A stretch of DNA of 63,793 nt, filler included, from Octopus bimaculoides (Eukaryota): NCBI RefSeq assembly GCF_001194135.2. It is 9 parts of 9 records of this genome, joined end to end, with 100 filler letters (N's around TTAATTAATTAA, not from the genome) between each part and the next. Parts side by side here need not be neighbours in the genome. Positions count along the whole stretch, not along the records: positions 24,256 to 35,400 come from NC_068994.1; 8 more parts are not named here. One strand, given 5' to 3'. How positions within the stretch are numbered: the stretch's first letter is position 1; the number at the start of each line of letters is the position of its first letter. The notes under the pieces were generated by a model that was not told the origin of the DNA, did not search any database, and was given only the letters and a program-made list of their open reading frames with translations. The position numbers and the translations under genes are program-made. Shown piece after piece: positions 26,988 through 35,400 of this stretch.

Positions 26988-27585
26988 GTACACGCACACG
27001 CGCACGCACACGCACACGCACACACACACACACACANNNNNNNNNNNNNNNNNNNNNNNNNNNNNNNNNNNNNNNNNNNNNNNNNNNNNNNNNNNNNNNN
27101 NNNNNNNNNNNNNNNNNNNNNNNNNNNNNNNNNNNNNNNNNNNNNNNNNNNNNNNNNNNNNNNNNNNNNNNNNNNNNNNNNNNNNNNNNNNNNNNNNNNN
27201 NNNNNNNNNNNNNNNNNNNNNNNNNNNNNNNNNNNNNNNNNNNNNNNNNNNNNNNNNNNNNNNNNNNNNNNNNNNNNNNNNNNNNNNNNNNNNNNNNNNN
27301 NNNNNNNNNNNNNNNNNNNNNNNNNNNNNNNNNNNNNNNNNNNNNNNNNNNNNNNNNNNNNNNNNNNNNNNNNNNNNNNNNNNNNNNNNNNNNNNNNNNN
27401 NNNNNNNNNNNNNNNNNNNNNNNNNNNNNNNNNNNNNNNNNNNNNNNNNNNNNNNNNNNNNNNNNNNNNNNNNNNNNNNNNNNNNNNNNNNNNNNNNNNN
27501 NNNNNNNNNNNNNNNNNNNNNNNNNNNNNNNNNNNNNNNNNNNNNNNNNNNNNNNNNNNNNNNNNNNNNNNNNNNNNNNNNNNNN

Positions 27586-28400
27586 ATTCTTGACGTCACG
27601 GAGACAGGAAGACTCGTTTTTGTTTCGTTTTTGCATATCCGTCATTGTTACCACTGATGTCAGGGGACAAGCGGGGTGGGGGGTGGGGTGAGGGACGGGT
27701 GTGAGGTGTTGATGATGGTGACGATGCCTCCCCCTCCCCGTCTTCTCCCACCAAACAATCACGTGCCAGATGAAAAAAGAACTTGACTCATAACACAGTG
27801 CTGGAGCCGGGAAGACACGACGAAGAAAGAAAACTACTTGGCACTTTTAATATTTCGAAAGATGACTTTTCCTAGATGGCATTGCCACTCTCTACTCTTA
27901 GTCTGCTGATACCACCACCCCTCTTCTCTGTCTACCTCTCTCTCCTCCTCCCCCTCTCGATGTTTTACCGTGAAATGGTGTTCCTAACACCCTCTTTCTC
28001 TCTCTCTCCAGTTTGTTATTGTTGTACAACTCCATTTCTTCCCATTTTTCTTTCTATAAATACATCTTAGTTTGGAACACGGACAATAGTCGGCTCCTTT
28101 ATTATGTTTTTATTTTTTCCCCTCATTTCCATTTCGTTTTGCTTGCTCTATGTACCTTTAACCATACACCCCTTGTTAATATAATATGATATAATATAAT
28201 AATATATGGCAATCTTTCGGGAAGAGTTTATGACGTCATGAGTGAGTGTATGACTTTGTCTTTTTGCTTGACAGAGCTGAACAGTCAAACACACACACAC
28301 ACACACATTCGCACTCGTGACTGACGTCATGTACTAATACCGAAACACTGCATACTTATAATACTATATATTCCAGAGATGTATTTACCGGGCACGTGAT
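27586..28400. promoter_or_regulatory. Candidate CRE/AP-1/E-box enhancer or promoter
   Basis: TGACGTCA at 27591, 28231 and 28322; TGACTCA at 27784; CACGTG at 27760 and 28393; locally GC-richer, not recognisably repeat-derived. Confidence 0.5.
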
Positions 28401-28976
28401 TTGATCTGAGAATCTGAGTTGAAACTAAAACAATTGGTTATTATATTAGCCATTCAGAAACAAACAAACTTAAACATTTATTATTTTGTGTCTAAAGAAA
28501 ACGTACACACGCACACATACACACACGCACACGCCCGCGCGGACACACACACACACACACACACACGTGTGTGTGCGCGCGCGTATAGTATGTATGTATA
28601 TATATATATGTATGTATGTGTGTATGTATGTATAGGCGCTGGAACGATTGTGAAGTTTGCTGTACAACCACGTTGTTTCAGGTTCAATCTCAGTTTGCAG
28701 CACCTTGGGCAAGGCTCTTTTTCTATAGCAGAAGACACTTGCTCAAGATGTCGCGCAGTGGGAAAAAACTTTGAAAAGCTTCACACTCTTAAGAGATACA
28801 TAACTATCTACATTTTCCCTGGGATGCATGAAAGACATAGCCTTCGTAGTAAGTCGAAACAATTTTTCATCAATTAAAATTTTATTCTTAATCGATCCAT
28901 CTATTTTCTTCGCTCTCTCTGCCTAGGAGAATCGTTGTGGGGCAGAATCCCTTAGCACTGCTTCCATAGGGTCCTA

Positions 28977-29351
28977 TCAGTTGTTGTTGTTGTTGGCACT
29001 CCGTCGCTTACGACGTCGAGGGTTCCAGTTGATCTGGCGATCAACGGAACAACCTGCTCGTGAAATTAACGTGCAAGTGGCTGAGCACTCCACAGACACG
29101 TGTACCCTTAACGTAGTACTCGGGGATATTCAGCGTGACACAGCGGGACAAAGCTGGCCCTTTGAATTACAGGCACAGCAGAAACAGGAAGTAAGAGTGA
29201 GAGAAAGTTGTGAAAGAGTACAGCAGGGTTCGCCACCATCCCCTGCCGGAGCCTCGTGGAACTTTTAGGTGTTTTCGCTCAATAAACACTCATAACGCCC
29301 TGTCTGGGAATCGAAACCGCGATCCTATGGTCGCAAGTCCGCTGCCTTAAA
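28977..29351 (-). mobile_element. tRNA-headed SINE (ttggcactccgtcg... family), head runs into gap
   Basis: gtgttttcgctcaataaacactc...ggaatcgaaaccgcgatcc head (reverse) and a (GTT)n tail. Confidence 0.8.
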
Positions 29352-29899
29352 NNNNNNNNNNNNNNNNNNNNNNNNNNNNNNNNNNNNNNNNNNNNNNNNN
29401 NNNNNNNNNNNNNNNNNNNNNNNNNNNNNNNNNNNNNNNNNNNNNNNNNNNNNNNNNNNNNNNNNNNNNNNNNNNNNNNNNNNNNNNNNNNNNNNNNNNN
29501 NNNNNNNNNNNNNNNNNNNNNNNNNNNNNNNNNNNNNNNNNNNNNNNNNNNNNNNNNNNNNNNNNNNNNNNNNNNNNNNNNNNNNNNNNNNNNNNNNNNN
29601 NNNNNNNNNNNNNNNNNNNNNNNNNNNNNNNNNNNNNNNNNNNNNNNNNNNNNNNNNNNNNNNNNNNNNNNNNNNNNNNNNNNNNNNNNNNNNNNNNNNN
29701 NNNNNNNNNNNNNNNNNNNNNNNNNNNNNNNNNNNNNNNNNNNNNGCGTTAACAATGAATTTTGTCTAAAACCGAACAACACCGACAAAAATAAAATTGA
29801 TTAAAAAGTTAAATGGAATTTGAATTTCGGAGTTGTTTCCCTTCTTCTGCTGAAACCGAAAATTATCGTCGCTAATGTACAATATACACACACGTGTAA

Positions 29900-30175
29900 G
29901 GCGGCGAGCTGGCAGAGACGTTAGCACGCCGGGCGAAATGCTTAGCGGTATTTCGTCTGCCGTTACGTTCTGAGTTCAAATTCCGCCGAGGTCGACTTTG
30001 CCTTTCATCCTTTCGGAGTCGATAAATTAAGTACCAGTTACGTACTGAGGTCGATGTAATCGACTTAGTCCCTTTGTCTGTCCTTGTTTGCCCCCTCTAT
30101 GTTTAGCCCTTTGTGGGTAGTAAAGAAACAAGAAACGTTAGCACGCCGGGCGAAATGCTTAGCGGTATTTCGTCT
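29900..30175 (+). mobile_element. SINE family 2, full length plus partial second head
   Basis: aaggcggcgagctggcagagacgttagcacgccgggcgaaatgc...; head repeated at 30134. Confidence 0.9.
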
Positions 30176-30322
30176 GGAAAATTATTGCTCTGCTTTACGA
30201 GCAACCACCAGGAACAAATTAACTCGTATATCGAGGTTTTACTATATTCACAAAATGAAACATGAAATTTTGAGAAAATTTTATGATATATATCAATATG
30301 TATGAATGCGCGTCGTAATCTA

Positions 30323-30617
30323 CAGGGTGTCCACAAGGTCAGGGTACATGGAGTAAATAAAATCGTAACATAAATAATTAAATATAAGGAATAATAATTT
30401 CTTAAAGTATGTGTTAATCTCCATGTGGGTACATGGAGTAAATAAAATCATAGCATAAACAATTAAATATAAGAAATAATTTCTTAAAGTATGTGTTAAT
30501 CCCTCATGTGGGTACATGGAGTAAATAAAATCATAACATAAGCAATTAAATACAAGAAATAATAATTTCTTAAAGTATGTGTTAATCCCCATGTACCCAG
30601 ACTTTGTGGACACCCTG
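30323..30617. mobile_element. Tc1/mariner-type MITE containing three ~84-bp tandem units
   Basis: TIRs cagggtgtccacaaggtcagggtacatgg / ccatgtacccagactttgtggacaccctg; TA on the left; units start at 30342, 30427 and 30510. Confidence 0.9.
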
Positions 30618-31042
30618 GATACTATCTGAAAGGCATTTGGGAAAAAATTCAATAAATATAACCATTTTGTTTTCTGAAAGTTACGAGGAAGCAAAGTCCG
30701 CTCGTGGGTCCCATTTGTGTATGTATGCCAGTGTTTGTAGTATAGCATGTCTTTCAATGTATCGAACGATGTACTGCGGTCTATTTTTGTCCTTTTACTA
30801 TTTGGGAAAATCCCTTCGTACTCTTGTCAGAATAATCTTCTATAGCGCTGTGGGTAAAGGGAGGCAACTCTTTTCTATTGGTTTCAGATTTGGAGCAAAT
30901 TTCGGATGAATTTGCTCAAATGCGTTGAACGTCAATTTTCTATCAGTTACATCTTTACATTGTGAGTGTACGTGTGTGTGAGTGTGTGTGTGTGTGTGTG
31001 TGTGCATGAGTGTGAGAGTGAGTGAGTGCATGTGTGAGTGTA

Positions 31043-31235
31043 TGACTTGTTTCAGTCATTTGACTGCGGCCATGCTGGAGCACCGCCTTTAGTCGAGCAA
31101 ATCAACCCCAGGGCTTATTCTTTGTAAGCCTAGTACTTATTCTATCGGTTTCTCTTTTGCCGAACCGCTAAGTTACGGGGACGTAAACACACCAGCATCG
31201 GTTGTCAAGCGATGTTGTGGGGGGGGGGGACAAAC
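31043..31235 (-). mobile_element. SINE family 1, 3' half
   Basis: Reverse complement of the family 1 tail. Confidence 0.85.
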
Positions 31236-31578
31236 ACAGACACACACACAAAAACCGGGTAACCGGCCTTATGAGCCTTAGGTCTCAACACAGTAAGGTG
31301 CGGACCAATATGTTCGGCGTCTTTTGGGTTACATTACATATACAGCAAATAAAGTGCACCAGGGGAGGCAATACATGTAAAGAAATTACTACGGAGTGAA
31401 TTCCCCTGACGACTTAGGCGTGTGGGAGAGTGGATTTTGAAAAGAGGTTTTTTGCAGAATTGTTTTCTTTTTTAGGACTTTTATTGAAAAGGTTTGTTTT
31501 AAGTCTAATTCTCACAGCGTGTAATGTTAGGTACCCATAATCATTATTTTGTTATTCTCATTTATTCTTATTTCCACC

Positions 31579-31745
31579 TGACTAACCTCTTTTTTTTTTT
31601 TTTCCCTATTTTCAGGTAAGTCTAAGGTACTTGTATTGCAAAGCTCCTTTTATCTGGGAAGCCATTGTCATGAGTAAAAAACATTGAGCTAAAATAAGGG
31701 AAGAAATGCAAACATCTGGCGACCATCTTGACGTATGAGGTAAGT
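31579..31745 (+). other. Candidate recursive splice site with 124-nt RS-exon (31616-31739)
   Basis: TGACTAAC branch point 31579-31586, pyrimidine tract to 31612 (one A), CAG 31613-31615 directly followed by GTAAGT; second donor GAG|GTAAGT at 31740; stops in all three frames of the exon. Confidence 0.6.
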
Positions 31746-31883
31746 CACTCTCTGAACAAAAATATGAACAAGGTCTTTGGGTTTAAGATTTTATTTGGGA
31801 CAAGCATTTTAATGGTTGGATGGTAGACACAGATAAAACAAATGCCAACAAGATATTCTAAATTATTTGGGAATACTTTTATT

Positions 31884-32097
31884 CTTTTAATCTTTTACTT
31901 GCTTCAGTCATTTGACTGCGGCCATGCTGGAGCACCGCCTTTTAGTCGAATCAAATTGACCCCAGGACTTATTCTTTGTAAGCCTAGTACTTATTCTATC
32001 GGGCTCTTTTGCCGAACCGCTAAGTTACGGGGGACCTAAACACACCAGCATCGGTTGTCAAGCGTTGATGGGAGGACAGACACACACACAAACATAT

Positions 32098-32139
<42 letters not shown>

Positions 32140-32295
32140 GATGGGCTTCTTTCAGTTTCTGTCTACCAAATCCACTTGCAGGGTTTTGGTCGGCCCGAGG
32201 TTATAGTAGAAGACACTTGCCCAAGGTGCCACACAGTGGGACTGAACCCGGAACCATGTGGTTGGTAAGCAAGCTACGTACCACACATCCACTCC
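31884..32295 (-). mobile_element. SINE family 1, full length
   Basis: Reverse complement family 1 match. Confidence 0.9.
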
Positions 32296-33692
32296 TATGC
32301 AAAAAAAAAAAAATGAAGAAAAAATCCTTTTTCTCCGTCTTGCCCTCTACGATTTTTGTTACATGTCCATGTTTTTTCTGTAGGCACCAACCAATATAAC
32401 ATTTCACAAAGACCATAGACTGTCTTCTTGGTCTTCTGACTTTTGAAAAAAACAAAACAAAAAAAAAAAACAAAAGTGGCTGTGGGAGGATATCTGTCTA
32501 TGTGCAACTCCAGTTGTGTGTATGTGGGGGTTTATGATTTCTTTTTCTCTTGTTCTTACAGCCTCATGTGCTTGCATAATAATCAAAATGCTAACCCAAA
32601 ATATCAAACGAGCAAGCAAGCACAAACGAGGCAAACCTCAGGATGTTGTTATACATAATGTTAATTTATAAGCCGGTCACAAGATGTGAAAGCAGTTTGA
32701 GATTTTGTTGCGAATGATGTTTGTGATGTGTAACTGGGTTGATAAATCAAGGCATTAAAAAAAAAAGATTCTCAAAACTCCACTGATTGTCATCATGACT
32801 TCAAGAAAGAAAGAAACCAGGATGTTATATCTTTTTTATCTTTCACTTTTTTCACTCATTGGACAGCAGCCATGCTGTGGCACGTTCAGGGTTTTAGTCA
32901 AACAAATCAACCTTGGTTTCTTTTGCCAAGCTGCTAAGTTACAGAGATGTAAACAAACCAGCACTGGTTGCCAAGTGGTGGCAGTGACATGCACACACTC
33001 AGACACACAGCCACTCACACATGCACACACACACGCGCACACGGACATTCACACATGTGTGTGTGTGCATGATGTGATCACATGAACGTATTGTTCATCT
33101 GCCTGCATCCGACTTGAATTTAATTTTTTTTTTTTTATTATTAACCTGGAAACAGTTCTCACAGCAAAAACTCTATATATTTGCTTATATGATGTAACAT
33201 ATCACACACACACAATGTATATATTTATTTGTGTGTGTGTGCGTTCTTGGTAAATGCTACCCAGCTGCATAAATGGTTGGGTGTGACAAGACATTATGGC
33301 TCTGACACATTCATGCTACTCTTACTACTACTACTACCACTACCACTTCTCATAGCTAATTACATCATTCCTTCTTTAAGCTGTTCTGCAGTTTCGTGCT
33401 TCCATGCATCATTATGTGTATCTGTGAGCTCGCACATTCTTGTGTGTGTGTGTGTATGCGTGGTATGTGTACTTTTCTGTGTACCCTTGTTTATATATAT
33501 GTCGTTGTGTGTTTGTATGAGCTTCTATATGTGTATCGTGTATTCATTTGTGCATATGTGTTTGTGTGTGTGTAAACTTTTGTATATGTATGCTTGTGTG
33601 TTAATCTTTATATCTGTATATATGCATGTTTGTGTGTGTGTGTGTGAGCCTTTGTATATGAATATTTCATTTTGTGTGCGTGTGTGTACTCT

Positions 33693-34077
33693 TTTTACTC
33701 TTTTACTTGTTTCAGTCATTTGACTGTGGCCATGCTGGAGCACCGCCTTTAGTCGAGCAAATCAACCCCAGGACTTATTCTATAGCCTAGTACTTATTCT
33801 ATCGGTCACTTTTTTGCTGAACCTCTAAGTTACGGGGACGTAAACACACCAGCATTGGTTGTCAAGCGATGGTGGGGGAACAAACACAGACACACAAACA
33901 CACACATATATATATATACATATATATATATATATGACGGGCTTCTGTCAATTTCCGTTTACCAAATCCACTCACAAGGCTTTGGTCGGCCTGAGGCTAT
34001 AGTAGAAGACATTTGCCCAAGGTGCCACGCAGTGGGACTGAACCCGGAACCATGTGGATGGTAGGCAAGCTACTTAC
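33693..34077 (-). mobile_element. SINE family 1, full length
   Basis: Reverse complement family 1 match. Confidence 0.9.
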
Positions 34078-34410
34078 CGTGTGTATATTATGTATGAGTG
34101 TGTCTCTATCCATGTTGGATCTCATGTATATAGATTTATGAGAGCTTTTATGTGTAATGAACAAATATGTAAACATAGTAATACACAGGTAGCTATATAC
34201 ATGTTTACAAAATACTAAGAAATGTTCCCACACAAGCAAATGTATACATGTTCACTTAAGCTAATAATTTGTGACACATACACACATGGGCAGTAATATG
34301 CCTACAGACTAACAAATGCACACACACACACACACACACACACTAACACACATACACTTGCACATTCGCTAACATATTCGTGCATAGACACATACCTGTG
34401 CATATACACA

Positions 34411-34521
34411 CATGCAGATACACTAACACACACACATGCAGATACACTAACACACACACATGCAGATACACTAACACACACGCATGCAGATACACTAACA
34501 CACACGCATGCAGATACACTA

Positions 34522-34564
<43 letters not shown>

Positions 34565-34590
34565 CAGATACACTAACACACACACACACA
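34411..34590. repeat. 24-bp minisatellite (catgcagatacactaacacacaca), about 6 units
   Basis: Direct reading; units are embedded in CA repeats. Confidence 0.9.
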
Positions 34591-34740
34591 CACTAAAATC
34601 ACTATCACATGTATACCTACAAACCCTCACAGGCACTAACACACACTTATATGCATTTACATGCACACATTCACACGCACACACACACACATACACATGA
34701 ACATGCACTAACAACCACATGCCTCCTTTTGTATGTATGT

Positions 34741-34777
<37 letters not shown>

Positions 34778-34787
34778 NNNNNNNNNN

Positions 34788-34832
<45 letters not shown>

Positions 34833-35285
34833 GTTAGAAAGATAAGTGAATTGATAGAATGTGAGAGAGAAAGAGAGAAGAGACGTGAAGAGAATCTAAG
34901 ATTTGTAGAGAAGATACAGGATGGAGCAGACATGCAGAAATCAAGATAACGCTCTGTGTGTGTGTGTGTGTGTGTGTGTGTTTAGTCTCTTTCTTTGCGT
35001 ACCTGTGCATACAAGATATCAGCTGGCAGTGCAAATGATTACGAAAAATCTGTTGGGGGAAAGTTTTTGATTTTTTATTCCTGATATCTTGATAGTTTGA
35101 TAAGAAAGATTACGTATTTCTGGGTTTAGCTTTTTAGGTCTGCATGATGGATGTTGATGTTTCTACTCTCTCGGCTCCAATCCAATGAGTAGTAGTAGAT
35201 CAAGGTTTTAGGAGAGATATAGTTGCACTTTGTGCCATAATATATCAGTGAGGGTGATGGTGTTTCCGTGACAGTTTAACTCTAA

Positions 35286-35400
35286 GTGATTGAGACCTTT
35301 CGTGATTGAGACCTTTCGTGATTGAGACCTTTCGTGATTGAGACCTTTCGTGATTGAGACCTTTCGTGATTGAGACCTTTCGTGATTGAGACCTTTCGTG
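35286..35400. repeat. Perfect 16-bp minisatellite (gtgattgagacctttc) x7.2, truncated by the scaffold end
   Basis: Direct reading; no mismatches between units. Confidence 0.95.

What the first reader, a model, noticed from the sequence alone, without database searches (positions are those of the whole stretch)
31579..31745. Candidate recursive splice site (ratchet point) with a poison RS-exon in an octopus gene
Seen directly: near-consensus branch point TGACTAAC, a 26-nt almost pure pyrimidine tract, CAG, then immediately GTAAGT; 124 nt later a second perfect donor GAG|GTAAGT; the 124-nt exon has stops in all three frames. This is the architecture of recursive splice sites in Drosophila and of RS-exons in long vertebrate brain genes, where the regenerated donor competes with the downstream donor. 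I know of no description of recursive splicing in cephalopods, whose genes have very long introns. The alternative is an ordinary 5' UTR exon that happens to begin with GTAAGT.
Basis: partly seen in the sequence, partly recalled or inferred. Interest (0 to 1): 0.85.

Follow-up and report, generated by a model that had tools for sequence, protein, structure and literature searches.

The report
Candidate recursive-splicing exon in octopus DNA
A 124-base non-coding stretch in repeat-rich octopus DNA has the sequence layout of an exon that can be spliced in and then cut out again (recursive splicing), and the layout is far too good to be chance, but no RNA data could be reached to show that it is used.

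Summary
TGACTAAC is at 31579-31586 and a 25/26 pyrimidine tract follows. CAG|GTAAGT sits at 31613-31621. A second donor, GAG|GTAAGT, lies 124 nt downstream, and the 124-nt segment has stops in all three frames.

In an approximate splice-site scan of both strands of the 10-kb piece, the best acceptor and the two best donors are exactly these three sites. An order-3 Markov null predicts about 0.05 such full layouts per 2.7-Gb genome. So this is very probably a real exon-like unit, not chance.

Whether it splices recursively cannot be tested here. No RNA, no orthologous sequence and no gene model for this locus could be reached. The piece holds no coding exon, so host gene, strand and intron length are unknown.

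It has the TT at -5/-6 and a branch point at -31, as fly ratchet points do. It also differs from them. The exon is longer, and the downstream donor is as strong as any regenerated donor could be. That predicts donor competition with partial inclusion, as in vertebrate RS-exons, rather than silent "zero-nucleotide" ratcheting.

"Poison" and "in a gene" are unproven. Octopus origin is now supported through SINE matches. This is a good but unvalidated candidate.

The parts
31579..31586 (+). Branch-point-like sequence TGACTAAC. The predicted branch adenosine is 31585, 31 nt upstream of the exon start.
   Evidence: The distance falls in the -21 to -36 range, with a peak at -30, found for fly recursive lariats (10.1101/006163). 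Its use as a branch point is inferred, not shown.
31587..31612 (+). Polypyrimidine tract, 25 of 26 Y, including a T14 run. TT at -5/-6. No AG between the branch point and the acceptor.
   Evidence: It is part of the best-scoring acceptor on either strand of the piece (15.7 bits).
31613..31621 (+). Fused acceptor and donor, CAG|GTAAGT. The junction lies between 31615 and 31616.
   Evidence: It is the best acceptor and the best donor in the piece at the same junction. Combined score 28.4, against a next best of 15.4.
31616..31739 (+). 124-nt candidate RS-exon. It is non-coding (stops in all three frames, length not a multiple of 3) and 39% GC. ATGs are at 31670, 31706 and 31735. The last ATG is 5 nt from the exon end, and the two before it open short ORFs.
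31737..31745 (+). Second donor, GAG|GTAAGT. The intron would start at 31740.
   Evidence: It is the second-best donor of the piece (11.7 bits). Under the null model, the chance of such a donor within 30-250 nt is 0.004-0.005.
31295..31303 (+). Nearest upstream donor-like site on the + strand, AAG|GTGCGG (9.5 bits), at the edge of a truncated SINE. If used, the upstream intron would be only 318 nt and the regenerated donor would be AAG|GTAAGT.
   Evidence: This is a speculative alternative partner. No acceptor or start site for such an exon was identified.

Best explanation
This is a genuine exon-definition unit on the + strand of octopus non-coding DNA, built as an RS-exon.

Inferred mechanism:
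1. U2AF and U2 recognise the very strong acceptor (branch A 31585, T-rich tract, CAG at 31613-31615). U1 binds the consensus donor at 31740. Together they define the 124-nt exon.
2. The exon is spliced to an upstream exon that lies outside the piece.
3. This places GTAAGT (31616-31621) directly after the upstream exon's last bases and regenerates a 5' splice site.
4. That site then competes with the donor at 31740. Use of the regenerated donor removes the 124 nt together with the downstream intron, which is recursive splicing. Use of the downstream donor keeps a 124-nt, stop-filled, frame-shifting exon in the RNA.

The downstream donor (GAG|GTAAGT) is as strong as any regenerated donor could be. 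I therefore expect real competition and partial inclusion, as with vertebrate RS-exons and fly expressed RS-exons. I do not expect a silent fly-type zero-nucleotide ratchet.

Shown: the sequence layout and its statistical rarity. Inferred: transcription, strand, the order of the steps and the outcome.
For: - All motifs are present at the stated coordinates.
- The top acceptor and the two top donors of the whole piece, on both strands, are the three sites of the unit.
- The junction is a 4.3-sd outlier among 54 AG|GT sites.
- AGGTAAGT occurs only at these two places, on the same strand. It occurs zero times in a 25-kb control octopus locus.
- Markov null: about 11-13 junctions this strong per genome, times 0.004-0.005 for the second donor, gives about 0.05 full layouts per genome.
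- TT at -5/-6 and a branch point at -31 match fly ratchet-point features.
- A strong 5'ss downstream of the recursive site is what exon-definition models require (PMC6110457; PMC6224609; PMC8605326).
- The exon content is non-coding and out of frame, as described for cryptic RS-exons.
- The acceptor looks like real O. bimaculoides acceptors recovered from locus L001.
- RP-type motifs are enriched 4-22 fold on the sense strand of large introns in every invertebrate tested by Shepard et al. (PMC2773006).
Against: - There is no RNA evidence of any kind and no conservation data.
- The host gene, strand and intron length are unknown. The piece contains no recognisable coding exon.
- The downstream donor is not weaker than the regenerated donor, and the exon is 124 nt. 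Fly cryptic RS-exons are about 50 nt, mostly with the donor less than 100 nt away and weaker.
- In mammals, exons that begin with a 5'ss motif are overwhelmingly ordinary included exons: more than 6,400 against nine fully suppressed intronic sites.
- Real octopus DNA produces repeat-borne RP-like junctions more often than the Markov null suggests.
Confidence: 0.4

Rival explanations
1. It is an ordinary non-coding cassette or constitutive exon (a 5'-UTR exon or lncRNA exon) that happens to begin with GTAAGT. It is spliced in with the acceptor at 31615/31616 and the donor at 31739/31740. The regenerated donor is not used, either because the upstream exon ends unfavourably or because the exon junction complex represses it.
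For: - The same strong exon-definition signals apply.
- The downstream donor is maximal, which favours inclusion.
- An ATG lies 5 nt from the exon end (31735), compatible with a UTR exon carrying a start codon.
- In deuterostomes most exons that start with a 5'ss motif are normally included annotated exons (PMC6224609; PMC8605326).
Against: - GTAAGT at exon positions 1-6 is the full intronic consensus, not a partial match.
- Two upstream ATGs with short ORFs precede the terminal ATG, which makes it a poor translation leader.
- By Blazquez's definition such an exon would still be a putative RS-exon if the upstream exon ends suitably, so this rival differs only in whether recursion actually happens.
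Confidence: 0.28
2. It is an unused pseudo-exon. The motifs arose by chance or were carried in by an uncharacterised repeat, for example an antisense retroposon whose poly(A) tail now reads as the T14 tract. The locus is not spliced, or not even transcribed on the + strand.
For: - The piece is dominated by SINEs and microsatellites.
- The T14 run could be an antisense poly(A) tail.
- A repeat-borne RP-like junction (23.5 bits) exists in only 21 kb of control octopus DNA.
- No gene was found in the piece.
Against: - No target-site duplication, terminal inverted repeat or second copy of 31262-31877 was found in the piece or in L001.
- Three independent top-scoring signals at exon-like spacing are expected about 0.05 times per genome at the observed strength, and about 90 times at loose thresholds.
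- The control repeat-borne junction lacks a second strong donor.
Confidence: 0.2
3. The two GTAAGT sites are alternative 5' splice sites of one exon that begins further upstream, for example at the weaker acceptor ttgttttcttttttag|G with exon start 31476. CAG|GTAAGT at 31616 would be the proximal donor and 31740 the distal donor. The T-rich tract would then be exonic.
For: Acceptor-like sites exist at 31476 (6.1 bits) and 31518 (5.2 bits). Both donors are consensus.
Against: Those upstream acceptors are far weaker than the 15.7-bit acceptor that coincides with the first donor. The branch-point-like sequence, the T tract and the AG-free zone immediately before 31616 form a complete 3' splice site.
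Confidence: 0.07
4. The transcribed strand is the minus strand. A weaker exon-like unit lies there, with acceptors giving exon starts at 31751 or 31688 and a donor GAG|GTTAGT whose intron starts at 31586. The plus-strand motifs would then be irrelevant.
For: One search lists minus-strand acceptors of 8.5 and 9.8 bits and a donor of 7.6 bits. That donor is the reverse complement of the '+ strand branch point'.
Against: These scores are much lower than the + strand sites. An exon there would contain an A14 run.
Confidence: 0.03

Closest known systems
Drosophila intronic ratchet points with cryptic RS-exons (Ubx, kuz, Bx and others; Duff et al. 2015; Joseph et al. 2018, 2021)
   Same: A 3' splice site fused to a 5' splice site around AG|GT, with a prominent pyrimidine tract, TT at -5/-6, GTAAGT, and a branch point about 30 nt upstream. 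A downstream 5'ss defines a non-coding, out-of-frame exon.
   Different: The fly cryptic RS-exon is about 50 nt, with a donor that is usually less than 100 nt away and weaker than the regenerated one. Here the exon is 124 nt and the donor is equally strong. Fly sites are defined by RNA evidence, by conservation and by lying in introns longer than 11 kb. None of these could be tested here.
Vertebrate RS-exons in long genes (Sibley et al. 2015) and annotated RS-exons repressed by the exon junction complex (Blazquez et al. 2018)
   Same: [quoted passage not shown] Inclusion introduces premature stops. The balanced donor strengths and the ordinary exon length here fit this type best.
   Different: Vertebrate cases are tied to known long genes with RNA evidence. 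Here the upstream exon is unknown, and so is the exonic half of the reconstituted donor. Nothing is known about EJC repression in cephalopods.
Poison exons and decoy exons
   Same: A short non-coding cassette with stops in every frame and a length that is not a multiple of three.
   Different: A poison exon must lie within a coding region and trigger NMD. Neither could be tested. Ordinary poison exons do not begin with a full donor consensus.
Exonisation of antisense retroposons (Alu-type)
   Same: A long T run immediately upstream of a usable AG, in SINE-rich DNA.
   Different: No element body, target-site duplication or other copy was detected around the unit. This is a lead from memory that the tests did not support.

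Membership tests
Fly-type intronic ratchet point (zero-nucleotide recursive site with cryptic RS-exon) | Strong 3'ss and 5'ss fused around AG|GT | tested here: met
   T-rich tract, then CAG|GTAAGT. It is the best acceptor and the best donor of the piece at one junction.
Fly-type intronic ratchet point (zero-nucleotide recursive site with cryptic RS-exon) | TT at positions -5/-6 (196 of 197 fly sites) and a prominent pyrimidine tract | tested here: met
   Positions -8 to -1 read ATTTTCAG, and the tract is 25/26 Y. The criterion comes from 10.1101/006163.
Fly-type intronic ratchet point (zero-nucleotide recursive site with cryptic RS-exon) | Branch point 21-36 nt upstream of the acceptor | tested here: met
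   TGACTAAC with its A at -31 and no intervening AG (range). This holds at the sequence level only. Use as a branch point is not shown.
Fly-type intronic ratchet point (zero-nucleotide recursive site with cryptic RS-exon) | Lies on the sense strand inside a long intron (fly range 11-133 kb) | tested here: inconclusive
   No coding exon or gene was found in the 11-kb piece. The 7.3 kb upstream holds no + strand donor above 10.1 bits. The host gene and strand are unknown.
Fly-type intronic ratchet point (zero-nucleotide recursive site with cryptic RS-exon) | Short cryptic exon (about 50 nt, donor usually less than 100 nt downstream) whose donor is weaker than the regenerated donor | tested here: not met
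   The exon is 124 nt. The downstream donor GAG|GTAAGT scores 11.7 bits, against at most 12.7 for any regenerated donor. Criteria. These are typical features rather than absolute ones, but for this reason I do not file it as a fly-type silent ratchet point.
Fly-type intronic ratchet point (zero-nucleotide recursive site with cryptic RS-exon) | RNA evidence: exon-to-site junction reads, saw-tooth read density, and lariats that use the site as a donor | not testable with these tools
   No octopus RNA or read data is reachable. Protein-collection and DNA-collection searches for the locus returned nothing.
Fly-type intronic ratchet point (zero-nucleotide recursive site with cryptic RS-exon) | The AG|GT core is more conserved than its flanks across related species | not testable with these tools
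   Only one unrelated O. bimaculoides locus could be fetched. It does not contain this region.
RS-exon in the sense of Sibley 2015 and Blazquez 2018 | An exon-like unit with its own 3'ss and 5'ss | tested here: met
   Acceptor 15.7 bits, donor 11.7 bits, 124 nt apart.
RS-exon in the sense of Sibley 2015 and Blazquez 2018 | The exon begins with a partial 5'ss motif, so that splicing to the preceding exon reconstitutes a 5'ss above the species threshold | tested here: inconclusive
   The intronic half is the full consensus GTAAGT. The exonic half depends on the unknown upstream exon. With the PWM, the reconstituted site would score from about 4.5 to 12.7 bits (my arithmetic on that PWM).
RS-exon in the sense of Sibley 2015 and Blazquez 2018 | Inclusion disrupts the reading frame ('poison') | tested here: inconclusive
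   There are stops in all frames and 124 mod 3 = 1. Whether the unit lies within a coding region is unknown.
RS-exon in the sense of Sibley 2015 and Blazquez 2018 | Demonstrated two-step splicing | not testable with these tools
   No RNA data is available.
Exonised antisense retroposon | The T run is the antisense poly(A) tail of an element with target-site duplications and other genomic copies | tested here: inconclusive
   There is no convincing TSD (only an AT-rich 9-mer at chance level) and no inverted or direct repeat. There is no second copy in the piece or in L001. Only about 31 kb of octopus DNA was available for comparison.

The most novel reading that the evidence does not exclude
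This is the first recursive splice site seen in a cephalopod, and in Lophotrochozoa generally. It would show that octopus removes parts of its long, SINE-filled introns stepwise through exon-defined RS-exons with balanced donor competition. That is a vertebrate-like mode in a protostome. The 124-nt exon would act as a switchable poison or UTR exon.
Probability: 0.3. Interest if true: 0.6.

Novelty: new member of a known kind. Interest (0 to 1): 0.4.

Why it matters
Recursive splicing has been shown experimentally in flies and vertebrates. Motif enrichment has been reported only for insects and sea urchin (PMC2773006). The searchable library holds no report for molluscs or cephalopods.

Coleoid genomes are vertebrate-sized and SINE-rich (PMC9068888), so how they process long introns is an open and testable question. 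A validated site would extend the mechanism to a third major animal branch. It would also show whether a protostome with a large genome behaves like flies (silent ratcheting) or like vertebrates (competing donors, possibly repressed by the EJC).

One motif-based candidate does not settle this. Its main value is as a concrete locus to check in existing octopus RNA-seq, and as motivation for a genome-wide sense/antisense motif count.

Tried and rejected
1. Fishing for transcripts or other assemblies of the locus. I used six-frame peptides of 31262-31897 and 32 unique ORF fragments from the whole piece against the 5.8-billion-protein collection. There were no hits. An exact look-up of ORF 31842-32039 found nothing on record.
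2. Exact DNA scans of the metagenome, prokaryote-genome and viral contig collections, with an exon 27-mer and a SINE 26-mer. All gave 0 hits. Those collections hold no octopus DNA, so the negatives say nothing.
3. A SINE-ORF protein search. It gave O. bimaculoides hits and one retrievable chromosome locus (L001). Three of the other five proteins were looked up and are not on record; the last two were not tried. A meaningful sense/antisense RP-motif count in octopus introns was therefore not possible. L001 served only as a small control.
4. The antisense-retroposon idea. No TSD, TIR or second copy was found. It is neither supported nor excluded.
5. RNA structure of 31560-31780. It is no more stable than shuffles (z = 0.46), so I rejected it as a feature.
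6. Rfam and tRNA scans of the piece. They gave only sub-threshold microsatellite-driven miRNA look-alikes and no tRNA.
7. Pfam on five longer ORF fragments. It gave only sub-threshold HTH matches, so my impression of a Tc1/mariner remnant at 26460-26856 is unconfirmed.
8. A literature search for the SINE sequence, to name it. It gave 0 hits.
9. The bacterial promoter/terminator scanner was not used, because it does not apply to animal DNA.

Full report
**What is there.** The piece (24256-35400) is draft-quality DNA with five N gaps.
- TGACTAAC is at 31579-31586.
- A 26-nt tract at 31587-31612 is 25/26 pyrimidine and includes a T14 run.
- CAG is at 31613-31615 and is followed at once by GTAAGT at 31616-31621.
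- After a 124-nt segment (31616-31739) comes GAG|GTAAGT at 31737-31745.
- The 124 nt have 2, 4 and 3 stop codons in the three frames, and their length is not a multiple of three.
- The predicted branch adenosine (31585) is 31 nt before the exon start. No AG lies between it and the acceptor. Positions -5 and -6 are TT.

**Is it more than chance?** AGGTAAGT occurs exactly twice in the piece, both on the + strand and 124 nt apart. Dinucleotide shuffles expect 0.35. The fused motif Y12-N-YAG|GTRAGT with up to two mismatches matches only here, against 0.01 expected.

I scored every AG and GT on both strands with approximate splice-site weight matrices. These come from my memory of metazoan consensus tables, so the absolute bits are rough.
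- The best acceptor of the whole piece (15.7 bits) and the two best donors (12.7 and 11.7 bits) are precisely the three sites of this unit.
- Among the 54 AG|GT dinucleotide pairs in the piece, this one has a combined score of 28.4. The others have mean -0.6, sd 6.7 and a maximum of 15.4.
- I trained an order-3 Markov model on the piece, with or without the candidate region. A junction at least this strong occurs at 2.0-2.4e-9 per nt per strand, or about 11-13 per 2.7-Gb genome counting both strands. A donor of at least 11.7 bits within 30-250 nt downstream has probability 0.004-0.005. The full layout is therefore expected about 0.05 times per genome.
- At much looser thresholds (12, 10 and 10 bits), about 90 are expected per genome.
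- My loose-threshold junction rate (5-6e-7 per nt) is close to the empirical background of RP motifs on the complementary strands of large animal introns, 0.07-0.12 per 100 kb (PMC2773006).

One caveat came from a control. In the only other octopus DNA I could fetch (L001, 21 kb without N), the best AG|GT junction scores 23.5 and sits inside a repeat. Real octopus sequence is therefore heavier-tailed than the Markov null. That control junction has no second strong donor nearby, and L001 holds no AGGTAAGT at all.

I conclude that the unit is very unlikely to be a random coincidence. The remaining ways for it to be non-functional are carriage by an unrecognised repeat, or location in untranscribed DNA.

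**Surroundings.** The piece is mostly repeats. It holds at least seven copies, in both orientations, of one SINE with an internal CA/TA microsatellite. It also holds two other tRNA-related SINE-like elements, several tandem repeats and a foldback element.

The candidate lies in a 620-bp stretch (31262-31877) between two SINE copies. That stretch is not repeated in the piece or in L001.

No open reading frame looks like a coding exon. Pfam finds nothing above threshold in the longer fragments. Six-frame peptide queries of the unique parts of the piece found nothing in the 5.8-billion-protein collection. So the piece itself gives no host gene, no strand and no intron length.

The nearest + strand donor-like site upstream is AAG|GTGCGG at 31298 (9.5 bits). 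Otherwise nothing above 10.1 bits occurs in the 7.3 kb upstream.

**Organism.** SINE-derived ORFs of the piece hit six proteins, and every named one is from Octopus bimaculoides (61-87% identity). Two SINE families of the piece recur in several copies, at 75-88% identity, in an unrelated locus of the O. bimaculoides chromosome assembly GCA_001194135.2. The literature says that SINEs dominate the octopus repeat landscape (PMC9068888). The genus is supported, but the species is not determined.

**What it most likely is.** The three signals together are what the spliceosome needs to define an exon, so a real exon-definition unit on the + strand is the best reading. If its acceptor is used, GTAAGT is necessarily placed after the upstream exon's last bases. 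By the definition of Blazquez et al. the unit is then a putative RS-exon (PMC6224609).

Which donor wins decides between skipping, which is recursive splicing, and inclusion. In flies, competition between the regenerated donor and the RS-exon donor determines this outcome. Intronic ratchet points generally have the stronger regenerated donor and a short (about 50 nt) cryptic exon (PMC8605326; PMC6224609).

Here the downstream donor is GAG|GTAAGT. It is essentially as strong as any regenerated donor can be, and the exon is 124 nt. I therefore predict real competition and appreciable inclusion. That is closer to vertebrate RS-exons (Sibley et al. 2015, as summarised in PMC5126111) or to fly expressed RS-exons such as Ubx mI/mII than to a silent zero-nucleotide ratchet.

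**Rivals.**
- (i) An ordinary 5'-UTR or lncRNA exon that merely begins with GTAAGT. The strong downstream donor favours it, as does the ATG 5 nt from the exon end. So does the mammalian base rate of more than 6,400 expressed RS-exons against nine silent intronic sites. Two upstream ATGs with short ORFs make it a poor leader.
- (ii) An unused pseudo-exon, possibly repeat-borne. The T14 run could be an antisense poly(A) tail, but I found no target-site duplication, inverted repeat or other copy.
- (iii) Two alternative donors of an exon starting upstream near 31476. The acceptors there are weak, at 6.1 and 5.2 bits.
- (iv) A weaker exon-like unit on the minus strand.

I put recursion at about 0.4, an ordinary exon at about 0.28, a pseudo-exon at about 0.2, and the other two at about 0.1 together.

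**Comparison with what is known.** As a working model it behaves like an RS-exon. As for membership, the sequence-level criteria of fly ratchet points are met: fused sites, TT at -5/-6 and branch-point distance. The typical short exon with a weaker donor is not met. The defining RNA, conservation and long-intron criteria could not be tested. I therefore do not file it as a fly-type ratchet point. I call it a candidate RS-exon.

'Poison' is unproven, because nothing shows that it sits within a coding region.

No paper in the searchable library links recursive splicing to octopus, cephalopods or molluscs, apart from incidental co-mentions. Shepard et al. found RP-motif enrichment in large introns of sea urchin and four insects but studied no lophotrochozoan.

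**Verdict.** If validated, it would be a new member of a known kind of system in a new animal branch.

Noticed in passing
window 24256-24545, 24549-24790, 25787-26190, 31040-31260, 31885-32282, 32833-33060, 33693-34078: At least seven copies, in both orientations, of one roughly 380-nt SINE with an internal CA/TA microsatellite. Some are truncated, and one is cut by the piece edge. The same family occurs several times in an unrelated O. bimaculoides locus at 75-82% identity. ORFs derived from it appear inside annotated O. bimaculoides proteins, which suggests SINE exonisation or annotation artefacts there.
   Followed up: partly
window 29897-30110 and 30131-30176: A second, tRNA-related SINE-like element. 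A 46-nt piece of it is duplicated 217 nt downstream at 98% identity (D19). The family is present in at least four copies in L001 at 81-88% identity.
   Followed up: partly
window 28940-29351, minus strand: A third SINE-like element that runs into an N gap. Its minus-strand 5' end carries a tRNA-like B box (GGTTTCGATTCC). ARAGORN calls no tRNA there.
   Followed up: no
window 30316-30624: A foldback or MITE-like element. Three tandem copies of an 85-nt unit (30342-30594, D10) are flanked by terminal inverted repeats of about 36 nt, with 31 of 36 bases matching.
   Followed up: partly
window 35270-35400: A perfect 16-nt tandem repeat, (GTGATTGAGACCTTTC)n, that runs to the end of the piece (D7). 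A 24-nt tandem repeat lies at about 34382-34590 (D3).
   Followed up: no
window 26460-26856, plus strand: ORF fragments that reminded me of a decayed Tc1/mariner-type transposase. Pfam gives only a sub-threshold HTH_23 match (E = 0.016, 15.4 bits against a cut-off of 24.6) and nothing for the larger fragment. The protein collection gave no hit. This is unconfirmed.
   Followed up: partly
window 31579-31589 versus 31737-31747: The branch-point region TGACTAACCTC is 10/11 complementary to the second donor GAGGTAAGTCA, and the two pair in the minimum-free-energy fold. The fold as a whole is no more stable than shuffles (z = 0.46). On the minus strand the same bases read as a donor-like GAG|GTTAGT.
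   Followed up: partly
L001 5081-5420 (O. bimaculoides CM046624.1, sense strand of a Myb-domain gene called at 3642-8917): A repeat-borne RP-like junction, ttttttttttttatgtggcacag|GTGAGG (acceptor 10.7 bits, donor 12.8 bits), with no second strong donor within 350 nt. It is a useful reminder that octopus repeats can carry fused acceptor-donor motifs.
   Followed up: partly
window 32301-32314 and 32446-32472: A-rich runs (A14 and an interrupted A/C-rich tract) lie just beyond the SINE copy that ends near 32282. They may be retroposon tails.
   Followed up: no
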